NCBI GenBank assembly: GCA_002269645.1
Contig: NIVC01004664.1
Location: forward strand, 1 to 38,811
Direction of reading: 5' to 3'
Length of the DNA: 38,811 bases
Source: Macrostomum lignano
Taxonomy: Eukaryota
Shown: positions 709 through 13,053 of the stretch, piece by piece
How positions within the stretch are numbered: the stretch's first letter is position 1
Layout: each line of letters begins with the position of its first letter
Notes under the pieces: generated by a model
Told to the model about the DNA's origin: nothing
The model's input: the letters and a program-made list of their open reading frames with translations, nothing else
Databases searched by the model: none
Translations under genes and position numbers: made by a program

Positions 709-4337
<3,629 letters not shown>

Positions 4338-4345
<8 letters not shown>

Positions 4346-4473
4346 GGTAACCACTAGCAGTTTTAGCTTAGGCTGGACGGAGACGGACAGTCGGCAGTAG
4401 CGAGCAGAGCGGAACGCTAGGCGAGAGGAGATTGAAGCGAGCTGCGGGGAGGGCGGAAGATTGGGGGCGGGGC
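4338..4473 (-). promoter_or_regulatory. Candidate THOP1 promoter: GC box (GGGGCGGGGC, 4464-4473), pyrimidine-rich leader, and an RFX X-box over the ATG (4338-4351)
   Basis: Motifs read directly; their function is inferred. Confidence 0.45.
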
Positions 4474-5663: not shown

Positions 5664-7085
5664 TCAGCTACTCAGGCACAAATCCAAGTGACCATTGATG
5701 TCGGACTCTGGCATTTGCCTGCTGCAAACTGGACAGCTGACCAGCTGCTGGCTGACTGCTCCTATGCTGGCGGCGCCACCGACGCCATTAAGAGCGCCAC
5801 TGACGCCCTTAGGAGCGCCACCGACGCCATTAAGAGTGCCACCGACGCCACTAGGAGCGCCACCGACGCCATTAAGAGTGCCACTGACGCCATTAGGAGC
5901 GCCACCGACGCCCTTAAGAGTGCCACTGACGCCCTTAGGAGCGCCACCGACGCGACTAAGAGCGCCACCGACGCCATTACGAGGGCCACCGACGTTGTTA
6001 TAGCGAGAGCTGCCACCGCTGCCGCCAAGTCGAATGCCGACACCAGGAAATGCGGCATCGGTGGTGCCGACGGCAGCAGACACGGCGGCGCTAACAGAGT
6101 CGGCAGAAGCGACGCAAACGGCGCCATCTGATTCAGCAATAGCAGGTCGCCAAGATTTCGACTCCACAGAACCTACAGAAGGATCTGGGCCGCTGCTAGC
6201 AGGCGAGGCGGGAATGAACTGCCGAATGTCCGTCTGTCCAGCAGCCGGCCGCTTCGCTGGCCGCTCCCGTTGCTCATCTTTGCCGCCGTCGGCAGCCCGA
6301 CTATTCTTCTTAGCCAACGGCTTCTTCTTATCGGCGAATCCTTCGGGCTCCTTGACTTTGACGAATCGGCCGCCGCAGTCGGCCTGATGACTGCGCCACC
6401 AGGTGTCGTTAGGCCCGGGCGCCCGGTTCATGGACCGGCGCACCCAGCCGTGGAATGGCGGCCGGTTCCGGCAGGGCCCCTCGCAGCGCCACCAGTGCTG
6501 CTTGTAGACGGCGACCTCGTCGTGAAAGCTGTGATAGACGGTGATGTTGGTGCCGGCAGCCGAGTTGATGCGGCGCATGTGCGCCAGAAACTGCGGCCCG
6601 TGCCCGTCACGGTCGCGATTATTGGCGGTGACAAACAGGTGCGCGTGAATCATCTCGTGCAGCAGGGTTTCGACTAAGTCGCGTCTGGGCCGCAGTTTGA
6701 GCAGCGGCTCGCTCAGTTTAATGCAGCAGAGGCCGCCGCGGCCCTCGTAGCAGCACAGGCCGGCGCACAGGGTCATGCGGGGGCTCCACTTCACCTCAAC
6801 TGCGACCAGGCTGCCGCCGAAGTAGCGCCCGTTGAAGTCCAGAAACAGGGCGTGCACATTGGGCGTGGGGTCCACCAGCTCCCAGTTGGGGTCCACTAGC
6901 GAGCCGCCCAACTCGTTGCTATTGGCAACGGCTGCCTTGCCTCTCTGCTTCGAGTCATCCTCCTCCTGCTCCTGGGAGGCCAGGCGCAGGCACAGCTCTC
7001 GGTCGGCCGCCTCCGACTGCTGCTCCTCCTGGCGGTCAAGCAGCTCGGCTTCCAGCTGCCACTGAAGCGCCTCTTCTGGGCTCCA
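5664..7085 (-). CDS. SPRTN: SPRTN/Spartan DNA-protein crosslink repair metalloprotease; single large coding exon, start codon unresolved
   Basis: SLVDPNWELVDPTP, KWSPRMTLCAGLC, ETLLHEMIHA (HExxH), HWWRCEGPC zinc-binding subdomain, PIP-like QTDIRQFI, SHP-like FPGVGIRLGG, C-terminal UBZ4 CPVCSRQMPESDINGHLDLC. The frame is open from the acceptor TCTCTTCAG|TGG at 7085 to the stop at 5664 (1422 nt). The ORF-track start at 6911 is TTG. Confidence 0.93.
   Translation of the reverse strand, partial: WSPEEALQWQLEAELLDRQEEQQSEAADRELCLRLASQEQEEDDSKQRGKAAVANSNELGGSLVDPNWELVDPTPNVHALFLDFNGRYFGGSLVAVEVKWSPRMTLCAGLCCYEGRGGLCCIKLSEPLLKLRPRRDLVETLLHEMIHAHLFVTANNRDRDGHGPQFLAHMRRINSAAGTNITVYHSFHDEVAVYKQHWWRCEGPCRNRPPFHGWVRRSMNRAPGPNDTWWRSHQADCGGRFVKVKEPEGFADKKKPLAKKNSRAADGGKDEQRERPAKRPAAGQTDIRQFIPASPASSGPDPSVGSVESKSWRPAIAESDGAVCVASADSVSAAVSAAVGTTDAAFPGVGIRLGGSGGSSRYNNVGGPRNGVGGALSRVGGAPKGVSGTLKGVGGAPNGVSGTLNGVGGAPSGVGGTLNGVGGAPKGVSGALNGVGGAASIGAVSQQLVSCPVCSRQMPESDINGHLDLCLSS
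5764..5994. repeat. In-frame 21-bp coding minisatellite in SPRTN (about 11 heptads, GVGGAPx/GVSGTLx)
   Basis: GCGCCACCGACGCCATTAAGA-type units on +; translation visible in ORF 5664..6911. Confidence 0.95.
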
Positions 7086-7122
7086 CTGAAGAGATTGGAG
7101 AGAGATCTGGTTATGCGAAACT

Positions 7123-7376
7123 GATAGTATGTAACTATGCTAGTATGTACCTATGATAGTATGTAACTATGCTAGTATGTACCTATGATAGTATGTAACT
7201 ATGCTAGTATGTACCTATGATAGTATGTAACTATGCTAGTATGTACCTATGATAGTATGTAACTATGCTAGTATGTACCTATGCTAGTATGTAACTATGA
7301 TAGTATGTACCTATGCTAGTATGTAACTATGATAGTATGTAACTATGCTAGTATGTAACTATGCTAGTATGTAAGT
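7123..7376. repeat. 16-bp minisatellite (TAGTATGTAACTATGC variants)
   Basis: About 16 tandem copies just upstream of the SPRTN acceptor. Confidence 0.95.
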
Positions 7377-7395
7377 ATGCAATACCGCAATAGAC

Positions 7396-7696
7396 TAATA
7401 ATAATTGATTACGCTTGCCCTAAAGGCCAGATGTGCAACCGACAGCTCAGTCGCAGCTATCGCGCGGCGCATCTGAAGGCTGCGTACGGCTGTTCAGTCC
7501 AAGGACTGGGGGGGTCGCCACACACACCCTCAATTACCCCAGCCAATGCTGGCACCCATTTTACAGCTGTGTGAACAGAAGCAATGCAGAGTTAAGTGTC
7601 TTGCTCAAGGATACAAACTGTTCCAGTGGGATCAGGAATCGAACCCCCCACCTTCAAGTCGTGAGTCCGACGCTCTGACCACTAGGCTACAACCCC
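7396..7696 (-). mobile_element. tRNA-derived CORE-type SINE, family A, full-length copy
   Basis: Minus strand: A box TAGCCTAGTGG, B box GGTTCGATTCC, then CCTTGAGCAAGACACTTAAC...CAGCTGTAAAATGGG resembling the MIR CORE domain, and an (ATT)n tail. Two more copies lie in the window. Confidence 0.8.
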
Positions 7697-7787: not shown

Positions 7788-7793
7788 TTTATT
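7788..7793 (-). terminator. Candidate polyadenylation signal (AATAAA) for YARS2
   Basis: TTTATT on + at 7788-7793, between the YARS2 stop (8620) and the SPRTN acceptor (7085). Confidence 0.4.
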
Positions 7794-8096
7794 AACTTGT
7801 AACTTACGAATAAAAAATAAATATTGATAACAATAACAATCGAGCTGCATACAGCATCTTGCGCTGAAATGCGGAAGACAAATGGCTATTTATATAATTT
7901 TTTAAACAGAACTAGCAGACACACTAAACTGGCGTACGCAAAAAATGCACAGATACAAATTGAAGCCAAAGAAGCTTAGATAAGATACAAAACTATCGAA
8001 AAAGATTCCGGCTGATCCTCCCAGATGGAGCCGCAGTCTAGCTCGATTGCTATCGTAAAATGAGTATGCTTTTTAAACTTCACGATATCTTCTCAA

Positions 8097-8484
8097 CATT
8101 GGGGTGGGGGCTGGCGAGGGAAGGAAATGCAGCTGCGTACATTGGGGTGGGGTCGGTGAGGGAAGGAAATGCGGCTGCGTACATTGGGGTGGGGGCTGGT
8201 GAGGGAAGGAAATGCGGCTGCGTACATTGGGGTGGGGGCTGGTGAGGGAAGGAAATGCGGCTGCGTACATTGGGGTGGGGGCTGGTGAGGGAAGGAATGC
8301 GGCTGCGTACATTAGGGTGGGGGCTGGTGAGGGAAGGAATGCAGCTGCGTACATTAGGGTGGGGGCTGGTGAGGGAAGGAAATGCGGCTGCATACATTAG
8401 GGTGGGGGCTGGTGAGGGAAGGAAATGCGGCTGCGTACATTAGGGTGGGGGCTGGTGAGAGAAGGAAATGCGGCTGCATATATT
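8097..8484. repeat. About 43-bp G-rich minisatellite (about 9 copies)
   Basis: GGGGTGGGGGCTGGTGAGGGAAGGAAATGCGGCTGCGTACATT units. Confidence 0.95.
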
Positions 8485-8619
8485 GGGATGTTGGCTGTAA
8501 CAAAATGAGTGTTATGAGCTGAAGTTATAGGATTTACATACTATCTAAAACTAAAAATAGATCAGCCAGTCATTAGCAATTTTCCGGAATTCGCTTGATT
8601 ATTAAAAGCTGTCCCGTAG

Positions 8620-11600
8620 TCACAGATTGTCCCATTCGATCAGCAGGAATCTCCGCTTGCTCAGCTTAATCAGCGAGGCGCCGCAGCCGGGCAGGACGCA
8701 GCTGTCGCGACTCAGCGGCGCGTCCAAAGCCGCTTTCGACTCCGCCGCCGACGTGTGACGCCGCAGATTCAGTGTGACCCGACCGGCGGACAATGCCTGA
8801 TTCACCTGGTCAGGCGTCATCTGGCCGAGGCTTCCGTTGCCGCCATCCTCGGCTAGCAGGGACAGCAGCAGCTGGCGCAGACTGACGCCGTCGCGCCAAG
8901 CCAGGCGACGCCGACACGAGCTCAACCGGTCGCCGCCGCGGCTGGGACTTTCCGACAGCACGCCGGCGGCCAGGTCAGCCGGGGTCAGGCTGGCCAGGGC
9001 GGCGGAATCTTCGCCGAATAGTATGCTGGTCCACTTGCGGGCCGCCGCCAGCCCGGCTTCTGGAGGGATTGGCATGGTTTGGGACTGAGATAAGAGACTG
9101 TGTACGTGGGGTGGGTAGGTTGGAGTGCGCATTGGGGTGGGGGTGGGTGGGTTGTAGTGTACATTGAGGTGGGTGTATATGGTGGGGTGGGTGGGTTGGA
9201 GTGCACATTGAGGTGGGTGTATATGGTGGGGTGGGTGGGTTGGAGTGTACATTGGGGTGGGCAGGTTGGAGTGCACATTGGGGTGGGTGGAGCTAGAGTG
9301 TATATGAAAGGGTGGCACCGTACACTAATGTGATTACACAGACCGGGCCGCAGTATTAAGCGAATCCCTCCCAGCTCCCTCACCCCCATGCAGCAGCAAT
9401 GTGACGCCATCGGCCAGCGTAGTCTGCGCCTCGTACCGCTCCGGCGCCGCTGCGTGTCGTTCGCAGAGTTCGGCCACCTGCCGATCACTTAAAAATGTGA
9501 ATAGACGAAGCAAACGGCCCACATCGGCATCTGGCGTGTTGCGCAATCTCTGCAAAGCGGATAGAAAAAACAGGAGCCAGTCAGGTAACTTCTCAATGAA
9601 CGTCTTAGAGTCACTCGCGTCGCCCCAGAGTCGCTTCAGATGACGCAGGTAAAATAGAAAAGGAGTGACTCTTAAGCGACTCTAAAACGAGATGTCACGG
9701 TACAAGTGGCCAAAAAATCGTTAGAGTCGCCCAAGAGTCAATTTGAGGTGTTTTGTTGTCCGCCACTCTGAAGCGACGATCTGGGGCGACGGTATGACGA
9801 CTCTGGGGCCGTGGAGTCATAGTTGAGGCGTGTCAGAGCCCCTGCCTGTAGAGTCACAGAGTTGTGCATTTGAAGATCGAAGCGCATTTGCGTCGCATGA
9901 TGAAGTTAAGTCACAGGTTTAGAAACACAGAACGATTCTTGGACGGCTCTTTCGCGACTCTTTTACAATTCTACAAATCACGTGACGCGCTTGTGACGCA
10001 ATAGTCACCTCTCCGTCGCATTAGACGCGTTTGAGTCGCTAAAAAGTTACAAAACCCGGGATTTTTCAATGCCATTCACATTAATCAGCCTCGCACCTGG
10101 TAAAGCGCAAACGGTGAAGTTCGCTCGGAGCTCAGCCACACAGTGTCGGCCAGTTGGTCGCTTTTGCCCAGCTTCTGTCCATCGCTGGTGGTCAGCAGCG
10201 GCACGGTCAGACCGAAGGCGAGGACGCCTGACTGCTCGAAGCGGCGCAGGCAGGTCAGGCCGGTGTCGATGTTGCCGGTCTGGTCGTTGCCGCCGATCTG
10301 ATAAATTGGATATATTTGAAAGATATTTAAAGCTAGTAATTACCATACACGCCATGAACTTAAGATAGATTTAGGCACCAACCTGCACCAGACATCCGTA
10401 AGTTTTGTACAAGTGCAACCAATCGTAGGCTTGGAACAGAGGATAGAGAAACTCCTTAACGCTCATGCCGTGCTTAGAATTCAGTCTAGTCTGCACTGAG
10501 TGCTTGCCTAGCAGATCGTGCAGCCGAGCGCCGCTTAGCTGACCGGAAAGAAATTCTGTGGCGCTCAAATTGGCATGCCAGGACTGGTTGTTGAGGACTC
10601 TGTGCAAGGGTTTTAATGAGTTGCAGAATAACAAATGCACACACAATATACACACAATAAGAAATTATTTATTGACTTAAACGTATTTGTTTTCGGAAGT
10701 TTTTTTCTATCCATATCTCAGTACTTAATCATTATCCTAGCGTTCTATACTTATCTAGGAATTTTAATATTTATCCAGGTATTCCGATCTTTATCCTAGT
10801 AGTTCAATCTTTATCCGGGTATTTTCAATATTTATCCAGGCATTTCAACCATTATCCAGGTACCGGTAGTTCAATCTTTATCCAAGTAGTTCAATCTTTA
10901 TCCAAGTAGTTCAATCTTTATCCAAGTAGTTCAATCTTTATCCGGGTATTTTCAATATTTATCCAGGCATTTCAACCATTATCCAGGTACCGGTAGTTCA
11001 ATCTTTATCCATGTAGTTCAATCTTTATCCAAGTAGTTCAATCTTTATCCAAGTATTAGTTCAATCTTTATCCAAGTAGTTCAATCTTTATCCGGGTATT
11101 TTCAATATTTATCCAGGCATTTCAACCATTATCCAGGTACCGGTAGTTCAATCTTTATCCAAGTAGTTCAATCTTTATCCAAGTAGTTCAATCTTTATCC
11201 AGGTAGTTTCAATCTTTATCCAGGTATTTTCAAACTTGATCGATGTATTATCAATATTTATTCAGGTAGTTTAATCTCTGTCCAGGTATTTTCAATCTTT
11301 ATCCAGGTATTTTTTAATCTTTATCCAGGTATTTCAATCTTTATACAGGTATTTCAATCCTTATCCAGGTATTTTCAATCCTTATCCAGGTACTTTCAAT
11401 CTTTATCCAGGTATTTTTTATCTTTATCCAGGCATTTTAATCTTTATCAAAGGTGTAAGTCCTTATACAAGCGTTTTTATCTATCTTTATCCAAGTGGTT
11501 TAATCGAGACCCAAGACAGTCGGACTGTGACTGGCCATGTTAATACGAGTAGACACAGACAACAGTGGCCAATGGTATGCTTGTGATTCACAAGCAGATT

Positions 11601-12148
11601 AGCCGCCTAAAGTTGGAGCAATCCAAGGCTATTCAGCATTAAGATGCGCTCGTAAATCATCATATATTCCAAACCAAGCTAGCGATGACAGGCCAATCAG
11701 AAAATGTAAACCGTACTTCGTAATTCAACAACTTTTTCGTACAATTAATACAGCAACTGCGACTACCAATATACGCTAGCATTGCCTGGCAACTTGATTG
11801 ATGAGGCGTTGGGAGGCTGGAAATTGGCGGATCGGCGCTGGGCCTGCGCCTATAGTCATCTATATTAGGAGCTAATAATAATAATAATATGGTAAAAACA
11901 ATACTAATACATATCTTTTTTGTCTAACGCGTTCTAGCCAATTATTATTTACGAAAGTCCGAAAGTCGACAGTGCATTCTCAGCCTAGACTATTATAAGT
12001 ATTATCTACAGGCGTATGCAATATTACACATAATTTCTTGCTTACTAAATGGTGTATAATACAAGCAGTAACACTTGTGCTAGATAACTAATCATCGGTC
12101 TATTTGGTTAGAAAGACTGTAGTACGATAGAAGTGGAGCCATGAAATC

Positions 12149-12207
<59 letters not shown>

Positions 12208-12212
12208 TACTA

Positions 12213-12261
<49 letters not shown>

Positions 12262-12288
12262 CTAAGACAGACAGACAGACAGACACTA

Positions 12289-12341
<53 letters not shown>

Positions 12342-13053
12342 AACAGACAGATAGACACTGCGGAACTCACACGGCCTCGCCCGGACGCGCCCCATCACAG
12401 CAGAAATATTTCCCATGATTATCCGCAATGCCGGCCAGCTGCCGTCCAATGCTCGCCGAATTTTCTTCGACATCGCGCTCGGCCAGCCGGACCCGGTCGG
12501 ACATTCGGCCGGACGGATCGCCGATTCGGGCGGTGGCGCCGCCGACAACAAAGATGGCGCCGTGGCCAAGCGAGCGCAGCCGCAGCAGGCCAACAATGGC
12601 CAGCAAATTGCCCAGGTGCAAACTGTTGGCCGTCGGGTCGAAGCCGCAATAGAAATAGCGACCGCCGGACGCCGAATTCAGGTATTCGTTAAAGTACTTC
12701 TCACTGCGGAGGGTGGGTGAGGTCAATTGAGGTCACATGAGGTCATTTAAAGTTAATTGAGGTTAAATGAGATCATTTGAGGTCAGGTGAGGTCAGTTGA
12801 GGTTAAGTAAGGTCATTTGAGGTCAGCTCGAATGAGCTCGTCTCCCTACACCCTTCCTGGTTCCGCCAATACACAATCCTGTACATGTCCACATTGAAGA
12901 TAAAAATCGCAAGGCGACAAACCTTTTCAAAGGCAGCACAGCCTGAAAGCAGCCGCGATCAAGCAGTGCCCGGACCGATTCGGCCGCGCTGCCACCGCCA
13001 GCGGACAGACAGCGGCGGCACAGGCGGCCAGGTAAATTTATTATTGGGCGCAT
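8620..13053 (-). CDS. YARS2: Mitochondrial tyrosyl-tRNA synthetase, 6 exons, about 495 aa
   Basis: Exons 13053-12923, 12703-12371, 10599-10383, 10297-10097, 9549-9384, 9059-8620; all GT-AG, phase-consistent, 1488 nt. Arg-rich presequence [17 protein letters not shown]; [17 protein letters not shown] (HIGH-type); [15 protein letters not shown]; [10 protein letters not shown]; KLGKS (KMSKS-type); C-terminal [14 protein letters not shown]. Confidence 0.93.
9100..9292. repeat. Imperfect GT-rich minisatellite, YARS2 intron 5
   Basis: Recurrent GTGTACATTGGGGTGGGTGG / GGTTGGAGTGCACATT blocks. Confidence 0.85.
9618..9791. repeat. Nested inverted repeats (foldback/MITE-like) in YARS2 intron 4
   Basis: Outer arms 9618-9640 and 9767-9791 (identical apart from a 2-nt indel); inner arms 9666-9685 and 9721-9740 (18/20). 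Confidence 0.75.
10725..11460. repeat. Degenerate 20-bp minisatellite with higher-order blocks, YARS2 intron 2
   Basis: TTATCCAAGTAGTTCAATCT units; a larger block recurs at 10811, 10938 and 11088. Confidence 0.9.
12149..12356. repeat. (GACA)n microsatellite, YARS2 intron 2
   Basis: Direct reading; ends about 14 nt from the donor at 12370. Confidence 0.97.
12717..12826. repeat. 10-bp tandem repeat containing AGGTCA, YARS2 intron 1
   Basis: 11 units in exact 10-nt register; 7 carry a perfect AGGTCA. Confidence 0.9.

What the first reader, a model, noticed from the sequence alone, without database searches (positions are those of the whole stretch)
7083..7110. SPRTN has no start codon of its own: candidate spliced-leader-donated AUG
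The frame is open from a pyrimidine-rich acceptor (CTCTCTCCAATCTCTTCAG|TGG AGC CCA GAA) at 7085. The first in-frame ATG (MTLC) lies well inside the SprT domain. The junction is phase 0. Flatworm spliced leaders end in AUG, which is established to act as initiator Met when in frame, giving MWSPEEALQWQ... Upstream there are only a 16-bp array, a SINE, AT-rich sequence with a candidate YARS2 poly(A) signal (7788-7793) and a 43-bp array; I found no convincing conventional first exon. If true, this gene cannot be translated without trans-splicing and is the downstream cistron of a YARS2-SPRTN unit.
Basis: partly seen in the sequence, partly recalled or inferred. Interest (0 to 1): 0.78.

Follow-up and report, generated by a model that had tools for sequence, protein, structure and literature searches.

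The report
SPRTN gene borrows spliced-leader start codon
In the flatworm Macrostomum lignano the DNA-repair protease gene SPRTN has no start codon in the genome and most likely takes its AUG from the trans-spliced leader RNA; this mechanism is already known in flatworms, so the case matters mainly for correcting the gene's annotation.

Summary
On the minus strand, an intact single-exon SPRTN reading frame (7085..5667) begins directly after a pyrimidine-rich acceptor, CTCTTCAG|TGG. An in-frame TAG lies 18 codons upstream with no ATG in between. The first in-frame ATG is codon 104, inside the SprT domain.

The window is the whole contig NIVC01004664.1 of Macrostomum lignano (Mlig_3_7). This species' 35-nt spliced leader (SL) ends in ATG, and its trans-splice acceptor motif, [T/C]TNCAG, matches the site. 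The junction is phase 0.

Supporting evidence is indirect:
- Trematode SPRTNs start MWSD/MWSL, matching (M)WSPEE.
- GenBank uses this same acceptor in a paralogous copy, where a transposon-derived exon is cis-spliced to it.
- Another copy is annotated as 5'-partial.
- YARS2 and SPRTN share transcriptional-unit locus tags (Mlig032306 g1/g2).
- Both neighbouring genes show the same signature of an SL-supplied AUG.

Caveats:
- No SL-junction read could be retrieved.
- A second in-frame CTTCAG|TGG acceptor lies 24 nt downstream (7061), and the GenBank partial model appears to start there.
- "Cannot be translated without trans-splicing" is too strong.

SL-donated initiator AUGs have been established in flatworms since 2006. 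This is a new member of a known kind, of modest interest.

The parts
5664..7085 (-). Single-exon SPRTN (Spartan/DVC-1) reading frame of 473 codons plus stop. It starts with TGG (W) and has no ATG at its head.
   Evidence: 94% identity to M. lignano PAA54644.1; SprT-like residues 78-185, SPRTN_ZBD 196-243, UBZ-like 449-467. The frame is intact in all four genomic copies.
7086..7110 (-). Acceptor site 1: pyrimidine tract plus CTTCAG (7091-7086). The first exon base is 7085, phase 0.
   Evidence: 75% pyrimidine. It matches [T/C]TNCAG (PMC8629364). GenBank model PAA67284.1 uses it as a cis-splice acceptor in the L002 copy.
7062..7067 (-). Acceptor site 2: a second CTTCAG, 24 nt downstream. The first exon base is 7061, also phase 0, which would give MWQLEAELL...
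   Evidence: only 35% pyrimidine upstream. The 5'-partial GenBank CDS PAA54644.1 starts 3 nt after this site.
7140..7142 (-). Nearest upstream in-frame stop (TAG). The 18 codons between it and the acceptor contain no ATG.
6774..6776 (-). First in-frame genomic ATG (codon 104, MTLCAG), inside the SprT domain.
6531..6854 (-). SprT-like metalloprotease domain (residues 78-185). The HEMIH motif starts at residue 143.
7125..7380 (.). 16-bp tandem array (16 copies) in the outron / intergenic region.
7420..7696 (-). tRNA-derived SINE, with its tRNA-like head at 7696-7627. It is intronic in the only annotated cis-spliced isoform (L002).
7788..7793 (-). The only AATAAA between the YARS2 stop and the SPRTN acceptor, 826 nt after the YARS2 stop. 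It is a candidate YARS2 poly(A) signal.
   Evidence: Its use was not tested.
8096..8487 (.). 43-bp tandem array (9.2 copies) in the YARS2 3' region.
8620..13050 (-). Mitochondrial tyrosyl-tRNA synthetase gene (YARS2), six exons. The GenBank CDS is 5'-partial (Mlig002522g6 in this contig). It is the upstream gene of the same transcriptional unit.
843..4441 (-). M3 (thimet/neurolysin-like) peptidase gene downstream. Its acceptor is CCCCGCAG|CTC, with the first exon base at 4441. The 32 codons before its first ATG are presequence-like and also lack a genomic ATG.

Best explanation
SPRTN of Macrostomum lignano is most likely made from an SL trans-spliced mRNA. The 35-nt spliced leader ends in AUG. 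It is joined to one of two in-frame CTTCAG|TGG acceptors (7085, 7061, or both), and its terminal AUG serves as the initiator codon. The product would be MWSPEEALQWQLEAELL... or, from the second site, MWQLEAELL....

The sequence upstream (arrays, SINE, AT-rich spacer) would be an outron or intercistronic spacer of a primary transcript that also contains YARS2.

Shown here: the absence of a genomic start codon, the acceptor and its phase, the species and its SL, use of the acceptor in a published gene model, and the shared transcriptional-unit tags.

Inferred, not shown: that the SL is actually joined here, and that translation starts at its AUG.
For: 1. The frame has no ATG from the upstream TAG to codon 104. 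Codon 104 lies inside the SprT domain.

2. The window is M. lignano contig NIVC01004664.1. The species' SL ends in ATG, and about 30% of its genes are trans-spliced at [T/C]TNCAG sites (PMC8629364). Both candidate sites read CTTCAG and are phase 0.

3. No ATG-containing open frame followed by a GT[AG]AG donor exists in the 1.6 kb upstream.

4. Opisthorchis and Dicrocoelium SPRTN start MWSDTE and MWSLEE, with about the same distance to the SLVDP motif. In Opisthorchis the genomic ATG TGG TCT occupies the position of M. lignano CAG|TGG AGC.

5. GenBank PAA67284.1 (L002 copy) splices a mariner-derived exon to exactly CTCTTCAG|TGGAGC, so the acceptor is used. PAA54644.1 (L001 copy) is 5'-partial. 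It comes from a pipeline that cuts transcriptional units at SL-read peaks (PMC5730564).

6. YARS2 is Mlig032306g1 and SPRTN is Mlig032306g2 on one contig. In the other cluster they are Mlig002522g6 and g3. They lie on the same strand, 1534 nt apart, which is 609 nt after subtracting repeats. That is below the published 1-kb operon threshold.

7. Both neighbours show the same signature.
   - The M3 peptidase models begin at CCCCGCAG|CTC with no ATG.
   - The older-assembly YARS2 models begin YFQ|RPIINL, which corresponds to TTTCAG|CGC.

8. The gene is intact in four copies. SPRTN also appears in the gene lists of the M. lignano transcriptome paper (eLife 2016).

9. That the flatworm SL AUG can act as initiator Met is established: Cheng et al. 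2006, J Biol Chem 281:733, as quoted in PMC9851317 and PMC12582326.
Against: - No RNA read or transcript contig carrying SL plus SPRTN could be retrieved.
  - Exact look-ups of M+WSPEE.. and M+WQLEAE.. proteins were negative.
  - The representative-library search found only the GenBank protein.
- Which acceptor is used is unresolved. Site 1 has the better pyrimidine tract and the orthologue match. The GenBank 5'-partial model fits site 2.
- SPRTN is not annotated at all in this contig or in L004. That could mean weak or ambiguous RNA support for these copies.
- Non-AUG initiation cannot be excluded from sequence alone.
Confidence: 0.75

Rival explanations
1. The SL mechanism operates, but the acceptor used is the second CTTCAG|TGG (first exon base 7061), not 7085. 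The protein would then start MWQLEAELL..., and 7085-7062 would be outron.
For: - GenBank PAA54644.1 starts at CAG, 3 nt after this site.
- The M3 peptidase CDS starts 3 nt after its acceptor in three copies, while an independent UniProt model starts at acceptor+0.
- A single rule, 'mapped SL site + 3', fits all three 5'-partial CDS of the locus and places the SPRTN site at 7061.
Against: - Only 35% pyrimidine upstream, against 75% at site 1.
- It would cut through the first LALxLQ-like motif (EEALQ|WQLEAE) and lose the MWS N-terminus shared with trematodes.
- The annotated cis-spliced isoform uses site 1.
- A pipeline that cuts at every SL peak would leave the model starting at the downstream site even if both sites are used.
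Confidence: 0.35
2. A conventional ATG-bearing first exon is cis-spliced to 7085. It could lie in the spacer (for example the SINE-borne ATG at 7472 with donor AGC|GTAATC at 7413/7412), or it could be a YARS2 exon whose donor is phase 0 (exons 3 and 4), giving a fusion protein.
For: - One search lists in-frame ATG...GT candidates.
- One search shows the YARS2 exon 3 and exon 4 donors are phase 0.
- The L002 copy shows the acceptor accepts a cis donor when one is supplied, there by a mariner insertion.
Against: - None of the 27 candidates has the GT[AG]AG consensus.
- Most lie in tandem repeats or in the SINE and encode no conserved peptide.
- The SINE is intronic in the one annotated cis isoform.
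- The mariner exon is out-of-frame transposase sequence and is absent from the window copy.
- Orthologues place the Met directly before WS.
Confidence: 0.08
3. Translation starts at a genomic non-AUG codon (for example one of the CUG codons in WQLEAELL) or at Met104, without any donated AUG.
For: The sequence cannot exclude near-cognate initiation. Several CTG codons lie in the first 20 codons.
Against: - Met104 would delete the first 26 residues of the SprT domain and both N-terminal LALxLQ-like motifs.
- Near-cognate initiation is rare, and unnecessary where an SL AUG is available in frame.
Confidence: 0.07
4. The missing ATG is an assembly or polishing artefact, or the copy is a pseudogene.
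For: - Mlig_3_7 was polished with RNA-seq, and the YARS2 start region differs between assemblies.
- SPRTN is unannotated in this contig.
Against: - Four separately assembled copies have identical CAG|TGG sequence and intact 473-480-codon frames.
- RNA-based polishing would tend to create an ATG here, not remove one.
- SPRTN is expressed.
Confidence: 0.03

Closest known systems
Flatworm SL 3'-terminal AUG used as initiator methionine (Cheng, Cohen, Ndegwa and Davis 2006, J Biol Chem 281:733; Schistosoma mansoni)
   Same: The SL ends in AUG. The acceptor is in phase with the ORF. No genomic AUG could give the conserved N-terminus, so the recipient mRNA needs the donated AUG.
   Different: It is a different species (a free-living macrostomorph) and a different gene. 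Here the junction and the initiation are inferred, not demonstrated. Two tandem in-frame acceptors are present.
M. lignano SL trans-splicing and operons (Wudarski et al. 2017, PMC5730564; Ustyantsev and Berezikov 2021, PMC8629364)
   Same: The same genome, SL and acceptor motif. The repeat-adjusted intergenic distance is under 1 kb. The gene is conserved and related to cell proliferation, as most trans-spliced genes in this species are.
   Different: Those papers do not discuss use of the SL AUG as a start codon or this locus. GenBank shows SPRTN only as 5'-partial, as a transposon chimera, or not at all.
slORFs: ORFs created by SL addition (PMC9851317)
   Same: A start codon supplied by the SL defines the ORF.
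   Different: slORFfinder was applied to nematodes, ascidians and euglenozoans with near-cognate codons. Here the AUG is canonical and the ORF is the gene's main conserved ORF.
SPRTN / Spartan / DVC-1 DNA-protein-crosslink protease
   Same: SprT-like HExxH domain, Spartan zinc-binding domain, C-terminal UBZ-like zinc finger, and N-terminal LALxLQ-like motifs.
   Different: A lineage-specific 21/42-nt G/A/P-rich repeat lies before the UBZ and varies between copies (473 versus 480 residues). There is no genomic start codon.

Membership tests
mRNAs that use the flatworm SL 3'-terminal AUG as initiator | The organism has an SL RNA whose exon ends in AUG. | tested here: met
   The window is M. lignano contig NIVC01004664.1. 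The SL sequence ends ..TTGCATG (PMC8629364). The SL gene itself is not in the window.
mRNAs that use the flatworm SL 3'-terminal AUG as initiator | A 3' splice acceptor at the head of the ORF that fits the species' trans-splice motif and has no convincing cis donor upstream. | tested here: met
   CTTCAG fits [T/C]TNCAG at 7091-7086 and again at 7067-7062. No GT[AG]AG donor follows an in-frame ATG within 1.6 kb.
mRNAs that use the flatworm SL 3'-terminal AUG as initiator | The junction places the SL AUG in frame with the conserved ORF, with no intervening stop. | tested here: met
   Phase 0 at both sites.
mRNAs that use the flatworm SL 3'-terminal AUG as initiator | No genomic AUG could yield the conserved N-terminus. 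| tested here: met
   The first ATG is codon 104, inside the SprT domain. There is a TAG 18 codons upstream. Orthologues start MWS...
mRNAs that use the flatworm SL 3'-terminal AUG as initiator | The SL is physically joined to this acceptor in mature mRNA. | not testable with these tools
   No RNA reads are available. Protein-level searches for SL-derived N-termini were negative. The only support is indirect: GenBank model boundaries.
mRNAs that use the flatworm SL 3'-terminal AUG as initiator | Translation initiates at the SL AUG. | not testable with these tools
   This needs N-terminal proteomics, ribosome profiling or a reporter assay.
SPRTN / Spartan family | SprT-like HExxH metalloprotease domain, Spartan zinc-binding domain and a C-terminal ubiquitin-binding zinc finger. 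| tested here: met
   Pfam PF10263 (E = 1.6e-30), PF22934 (E = 5.8e-25), PF18279 (E = 9e-4, below its cut-off). HEMIH at residue 143. Over 1500 homologues, all SPRTN.
M. lignano operon (downstream cistron) | Adjacent genes on the same strand, less than 1 kb apart after subtracting repeats. | tested here: met
   1534 nt raw and 609 nt after removing the arrays and the SINE. The criterion is from PMC8629364.
M. lignano operon (downstream cistron) | Both genes derive from one RNA-seq-assembled transcriptional unit. | tested here: met
   GenBank locus tags: BOX15_Mlig032306g1 (YARS2) and g2 (SPRTN); Mlig002522g6 and g3 in the other copies. The M3 peptidase has different prefixes.
M. lignano operon (downstream cistron) | A polycistronic precursor is resolved by poly(A) cleavage of YARS2 and SL addition to SPRTN. 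| not testable with these tools
   Only a candidate AATAAA at 7793-7788. No 3'-end or SL reads are available.

The most novel reading that the evidence does not exclude
The whole three-gene neighbourhood (YARS2, SPRTN, M3 peptidase) depends on SL-donated AUGs, and trans-splicing choice sets protein form.
- SPRTN would exist as two N-terminal isoforms from tandem in-frame acceptors 24 nt apart, with or without the first LALxLQ-like motif.
- The M3 peptidase would gain a mitochondrial presequence only when the SL AUG is used, and a cytosolic form from its internal ATG.

Trans-splicing would then act as a switch for N-terminal proteoforms and targeting, not merely as 5'-end processing.
Probability: 0.25. 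Interest if true: 0.45.

Novelty: new member of a known kind. Interest (0 to 1): 0.3.

Why it matters
1. Annotation. A conserved, essential DNA-protein-crosslink protease is missing from two of four genomic copies in GenBank. It is 5'-truncated in a third and fused to transposon sequence in the fourth, apparently because gene callers need a genomic ATG. Adding the SL AUG gives a complete, orthologue-like protein.

2. General method. In organisms with SL trans-splicing, ORF prediction should be run on SL-plus-exon sequences. Genomes polished with RNA-seq should also be checked for SL-derived 'ATG' written over acceptor AGs, as seems to have happened at YARS2 in this contig.

3. Biology. If the inference is confirmed, translation of full-length SPRTN in a stem-cell-rich regenerating animal is obligatorily coupled to trans-splicing. 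This is testable in M. lignano because it can be made transgenic.

None of this would surprise a specialist in flatworm RNA processing.

Tried and rejected
- Homologue search with the N-terminal 102 residues (M prepended) returned nothing, because the word index is sparse.
- The HMMER search of 1.84 billion representatives with residues 1-95 found only GenBank PAA54644.1 from Macrostomum. No transcript-derived protein carried SL-encoded residues (..SIYCM) before WSPEE.
- Exact look-ups were all absent for M+WSPEE.., M+WQLEAE.., WSPEE.., WQLEAE.., QLEAE.., SPEEA.. and MTLCAG.. forms of the three allelic versions.
- A chimeric YARS2+M3 query did not return the M. lignano proteins. I instead rebuilt the spliced CDSs by enumerating splice sites under the known lengths, which gave exact matches.
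- Searches of paper texts and supplements for Mlig032306 and Mlig002522 found nothing.
- The SL sequence is not in the window. ARAGORN found no tRNA in the SINE, but Rfam did find a tRNA-like head.
- The Dicrocoelium gene locus was not on record.
- I could not fully explain why GenBank 5'-partial CDSs begin 3 nt after the acceptor for SPRTN and M3 but directly after 'ATG' for YARS2. The rule 'mapped SL site + 3' fits all three only if the YARS2 ATG is an SL imprint.
- Pseudogene and assembly-error readings were rejected, because four copies are intact and identical at the junction.
Full report
WHAT IS THERE

The feature lies on the minus strand. Read in that orientation, the sequence is ...accagatctctctccaatctcttcag|TGG AGC CCA GAA GAG GCG CTT CAG TGG CAG CTG GAA..., with the first exon base at 7085.

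From 7085 the frame runs for 473 codons to a TGA at 5666-5664. The product is an unmistakable SPRTN/Spartan protein:
- Pfam SprT-like, residues 78-185 (E = 1.6e-30).
- Spartan zinc-binding domain, residues 196-243 (E = 5.8e-25).
- A UBZ-like finger, residues 449-467.
- HEMIH at residue 143.
- More than 1500 SPRTN homologues.

Upstream in the same frame there are 18 codons without an ATG, then a TAG at 7142-7140. The first in-frame ATG is codon 104 (6776-6774), which is 26 residues inside the SprT domain.

The described surroundings are also correct:
- 16-bp array, 7125-7380.
- tRNA-headed SINE; tRNA-like head at 7696-7627.
- One AATAAA, 7793-7788.
- 43-bp array, 8096-8487.

WHERE IT COMES FROM

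The best protein hit is Macrostomum lignano PAA54644.1. Looking up the neighbouring tyrosyl-tRNA synthetase showed that the window is the entire 38,811-bp contig NIVC01004664.1 of assembly Mlig_3_7.

Three further copies of the locus exist in that assembly: L001, L002 and L004. All four have an intact SPRTN frame, are identical over the first 860 nt, and read CAG|TGG with no ATG. They differ mainly in a 21/42-nt G/A/P-rich repeat before the UBZ, giving 473 or 480 residues.

DOES THE SPECIES HAVE THE REQUIRED MACHINERY?

Yes.
- M. lignano has one 35-nt spliced leader, CGGTCTCTTACTGCGAAGACTCAATTTATTGCATG.
- About 30% of its genes are trans-spliced and about 15% lie in operons.
- The motif enriched at trans-splice acceptors is [T/C]TNCAG (PMC8629364).

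The site at 7091-7086 reads CTTCAG and sits behind a 75% pyrimidine stretch. The Macrostomum genome paper PMC10468722 itself calls the SL's final ATG a 'translation start codon'. That the flatworm SL AUG can serve as initiator Met was shown for Schistosoma by Cheng et al. 2006. [quoted passage not shown]

INDIRECT EVIDENCE THAT THIS ACCEPTOR IS REAL AND THE MET BELONGS THERE

1. The L002 copy. A mariner-like transposon of about 1.3 kb is inserted in the spacer at window position ~7851. GenBank model PAA67284.1 joins an 84-nt piece of out-of-frame transposase sequence (donor AAGCCT|GTATCA) to exactly CTCTTCAG|TGGAGC. The spliceosome therefore uses this acceptor when a cis donor is offered. This is the behaviour expected of an outron acceptor.

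2. Orthologue N-termini. The SPRTN proteins of Opisthorchis felineus and Dicrocoelium dendriticum begin MWSDTE and MWSLEE. They reach the conserved SLVDP motif after 60 and 59 residues, against 62 for M+WSPEE.... In the Opisthorchis genome, ATG TGG TCT sits where M. lignano has CAG|TGG AGC.

3. Upstream exon candidates. Enumerating every ATG-initiated open frame that ends at a GT in phase 0 within 1.6 kb upstream gave 27 candidates. None has the GT[AG]AG donor consensus, and nearly all lie in tandem repeats or the SINE.

4. Neighbouring genes show the same signature.
   - The downstream M3 peptidase has the acceptor CCCCGCAG|CTC (first exon base 4441). Independent UniProt models start QLASISS and LASISS, and GenBank models start ASISS. 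The first ATG is 32 codons further on.
   - UniProt models of YARS2 from the older ML2 assembly start YFQ|RPIINL, which corresponds to TATTTTCAG|CGC, a perfect trans-splice acceptor. All four Mlig_3_7 copies read TATTTTATG|CGC instead.
   - Mlig_3_7 was polished with RNA-seq (PMC5730564). The assembly's ATG may therefore be the SL's ATG written into the genome.

THE OPERON CLAIM

YARS2, SPRTN and the peptidase are all on the minus strand. I rebuilt the spliced YARS2 CDS of L001 from splice-site enumeration under the known length. It matched PAA54645.1 exactly, locus tag BOX15_Mlig032306g1. SPRTN on the same contig is BOX15_Mlig032306g2. In the other copies the tags are Mlig002522g6 and Mlig002522g3.

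The tag prefix names a transcriptional unit, or a cluster of near-identical units, assembled from RNA-seq. The TBONE pipeline then cuts each unit into genes at SL-read and poly(A) peaks (PMC5730564). Two unrelated genes sharing a prefix therefore come from one unit. The M3 peptidase has other prefixes.

The spacer is 1534 nt, or 609 nt after removing the arrays and the SINE. That is under the 1-kb operon threshold of PMC8629364. Poly(A) site use was not tested.

The 9-mer CTTCAGTGG occurs twice, 24 nt apart, and nowhere else in the window. The second copy (first exon base 7061) is also phase 0 and would give MWQLEAELL....

Evidence for site 2 (7061):
- The 5'-partial GenBank CDS PAA54644.1 starts 3 nt after it.
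- The M3 CDS starts 3 nt after its acceptor in three copies.
- The YARS2 CDS starts 3 nt after the start of the suspect ATG.
- One rule, 'mapped SL site + 3', fits all three and points to 7061. This is inference about a pipeline, not a measurement.

Evidence for site 1 (7085):
- A much better pyrimidine tract (75% versus 35%).
- Its use in the annotated cis-spliced isoform.
- The MWS match to trematodes.
- It preserves the first of two LALxLQ-like motifs (EEALQWQLEAE and RELCLRLASQE).

Both sites may be used. Either way the SL AUG is in frame and there is no genomic AUG.

WHAT COULD NOT BE SHOWN

No read or transcript with the SL joined to SPRTN could be obtained. The N-terminal homologue search was empty. 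The exhaustive representative search found only the GenBank protein. Exact look-ups of SL-AUG forms were negative. Supplements held no entry for these gene IDs. SPRTN does appear in the GO gene lists of the M. lignano transcriptome paper, so the gene is expressed.

RIVALS

- A cis-spliced ATG exon from the spacer, the SINE or YARS2. The YARS2 exon 3 and 4 donors are phase 0. This is possible as a minor isoform but has no supporting signal.
- Non-AUG initiation or initiation at Met104. This would be unusual or would truncate the protease domain.
- An assembly artefact or pseudogene. This is contradicted by four intact, identical copies.

VERDICT

I put about 0.75 on SL-AUG initiation at 7085 and/or 7061.

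The statement that the gene 'cannot be translated without trans-splicing' should be softened to: no full-length protein can be made from the window copy without a donated AUG.

The mechanism is well known in flatworms, so this is a new member of a known kind. Its main value is practical: repairing the SPRTN annotation (absent in this contig and in L004, truncated in L001, chimeric in L002) and flagging SL-related pitfalls in gene calling and in RNA-based genome polishing.

Noticed in passing
window 13051-13053 (minus strand), with L001 4201-4203 and L002 3345-3347: The YARS2 'start codon' may be an artefact. All four Mlig_3_7 copies read TATTTTATG|CGC. UniProt models from the older ML2 assembly (A0A1I8IQM2, A0A1I8IY74) start YFQ|RPIINL, i.e. 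TATTTTCAG|CGC, a perfect trans-splice acceptor. Mlig_3_7 was Pilon-polished with RNA-seq, so the genomic ATG could be the SL's ATG imprinted on the assembly. YARS2 would then also depend on the SL AUG.
   Followed up: partly
window 4441-4346 (minus strand); acceptor CCCCGCAG|CTC with first exon base 4441: The M3 (thimet/neurolysin-like) peptidase has 32 codons between its acceptor and its first ATG: LASISSRLAFRSARYCRLSVSVQPKLKLLVVT|MATTTTKK. They contain 7 Arg/Lys and no Asp/Glu, like a mitochondrial presequence, and they have no genomic ATG. An SL AUG would give a mitochondrial form and the internal ATG a cytosolic one.
   Followed up: partly
window 5664-7085; L004 12628 onward: GenBank annotates no SPRTN gene at all in this contig (NIVC01004664.1) or in NIVC01001856.1, although the frame is intact. 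Only YARS2 and the M3 peptidase are called on either side.
   Followed up: yes
L002 8878-10185 (insertion point corresponds to window ~7851): A mariner-like transposon of about 1.3 kb is inserted in the YARS2-SPRTN spacer of one paralogous copy. It donates a cryptic ATG and donor that GenBank joins to the SPRTN acceptor (PAA67284.1). An older UniProt YARS2 model (A0A1I8IY74) reads through into the same transposase.
   Followed up: partly
window 7059-7091 (minus strand): CTTCAGTGG is repeated exactly 24 nt apart, and the two 24-nt units are about 67% identical (..SLQ|WSPEEA versus ALQ|WQLEAE). This looks like an old 24-bp tandem duplication that copied the acceptor, or created it from coding sequence.
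   Followed up: partly
window 5773-5994: A 21/42-nt tandem repeat inside the SPRTN coding region encodes G/A/P/V-rich units (GVGGAPNGVSGTLN...) just before the UBZ finger. It accounts for nearly all differences between the four copies (473 versus 480 residues).
   Followed up: partly
L001 10001, 12629, 4204 (window 7058, 4438, 13050): All three GenBank CDSs of the locus are 5'-partial. Each begins exactly one codon after the acceptor (SPRTN, M3) or after the suspect ATG (YARS2). This suggests a systematic 3-nt offset in how SL-defined 5' ends were converted to CDS coordinates.
   Followed up: partly
window 7472-7413 (minus strand), inside the SINE: A third CTTCAG is followed directly by ATG (CTTCAG|ATGCGCCGC), with an open 20-codon frame ending at a phase-0 GTAATC donor. 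It is a potential SINE-borne mini-exon that could in principle feed the SPRTN acceptor. There is no evidence that it is used.
   Followed up: no
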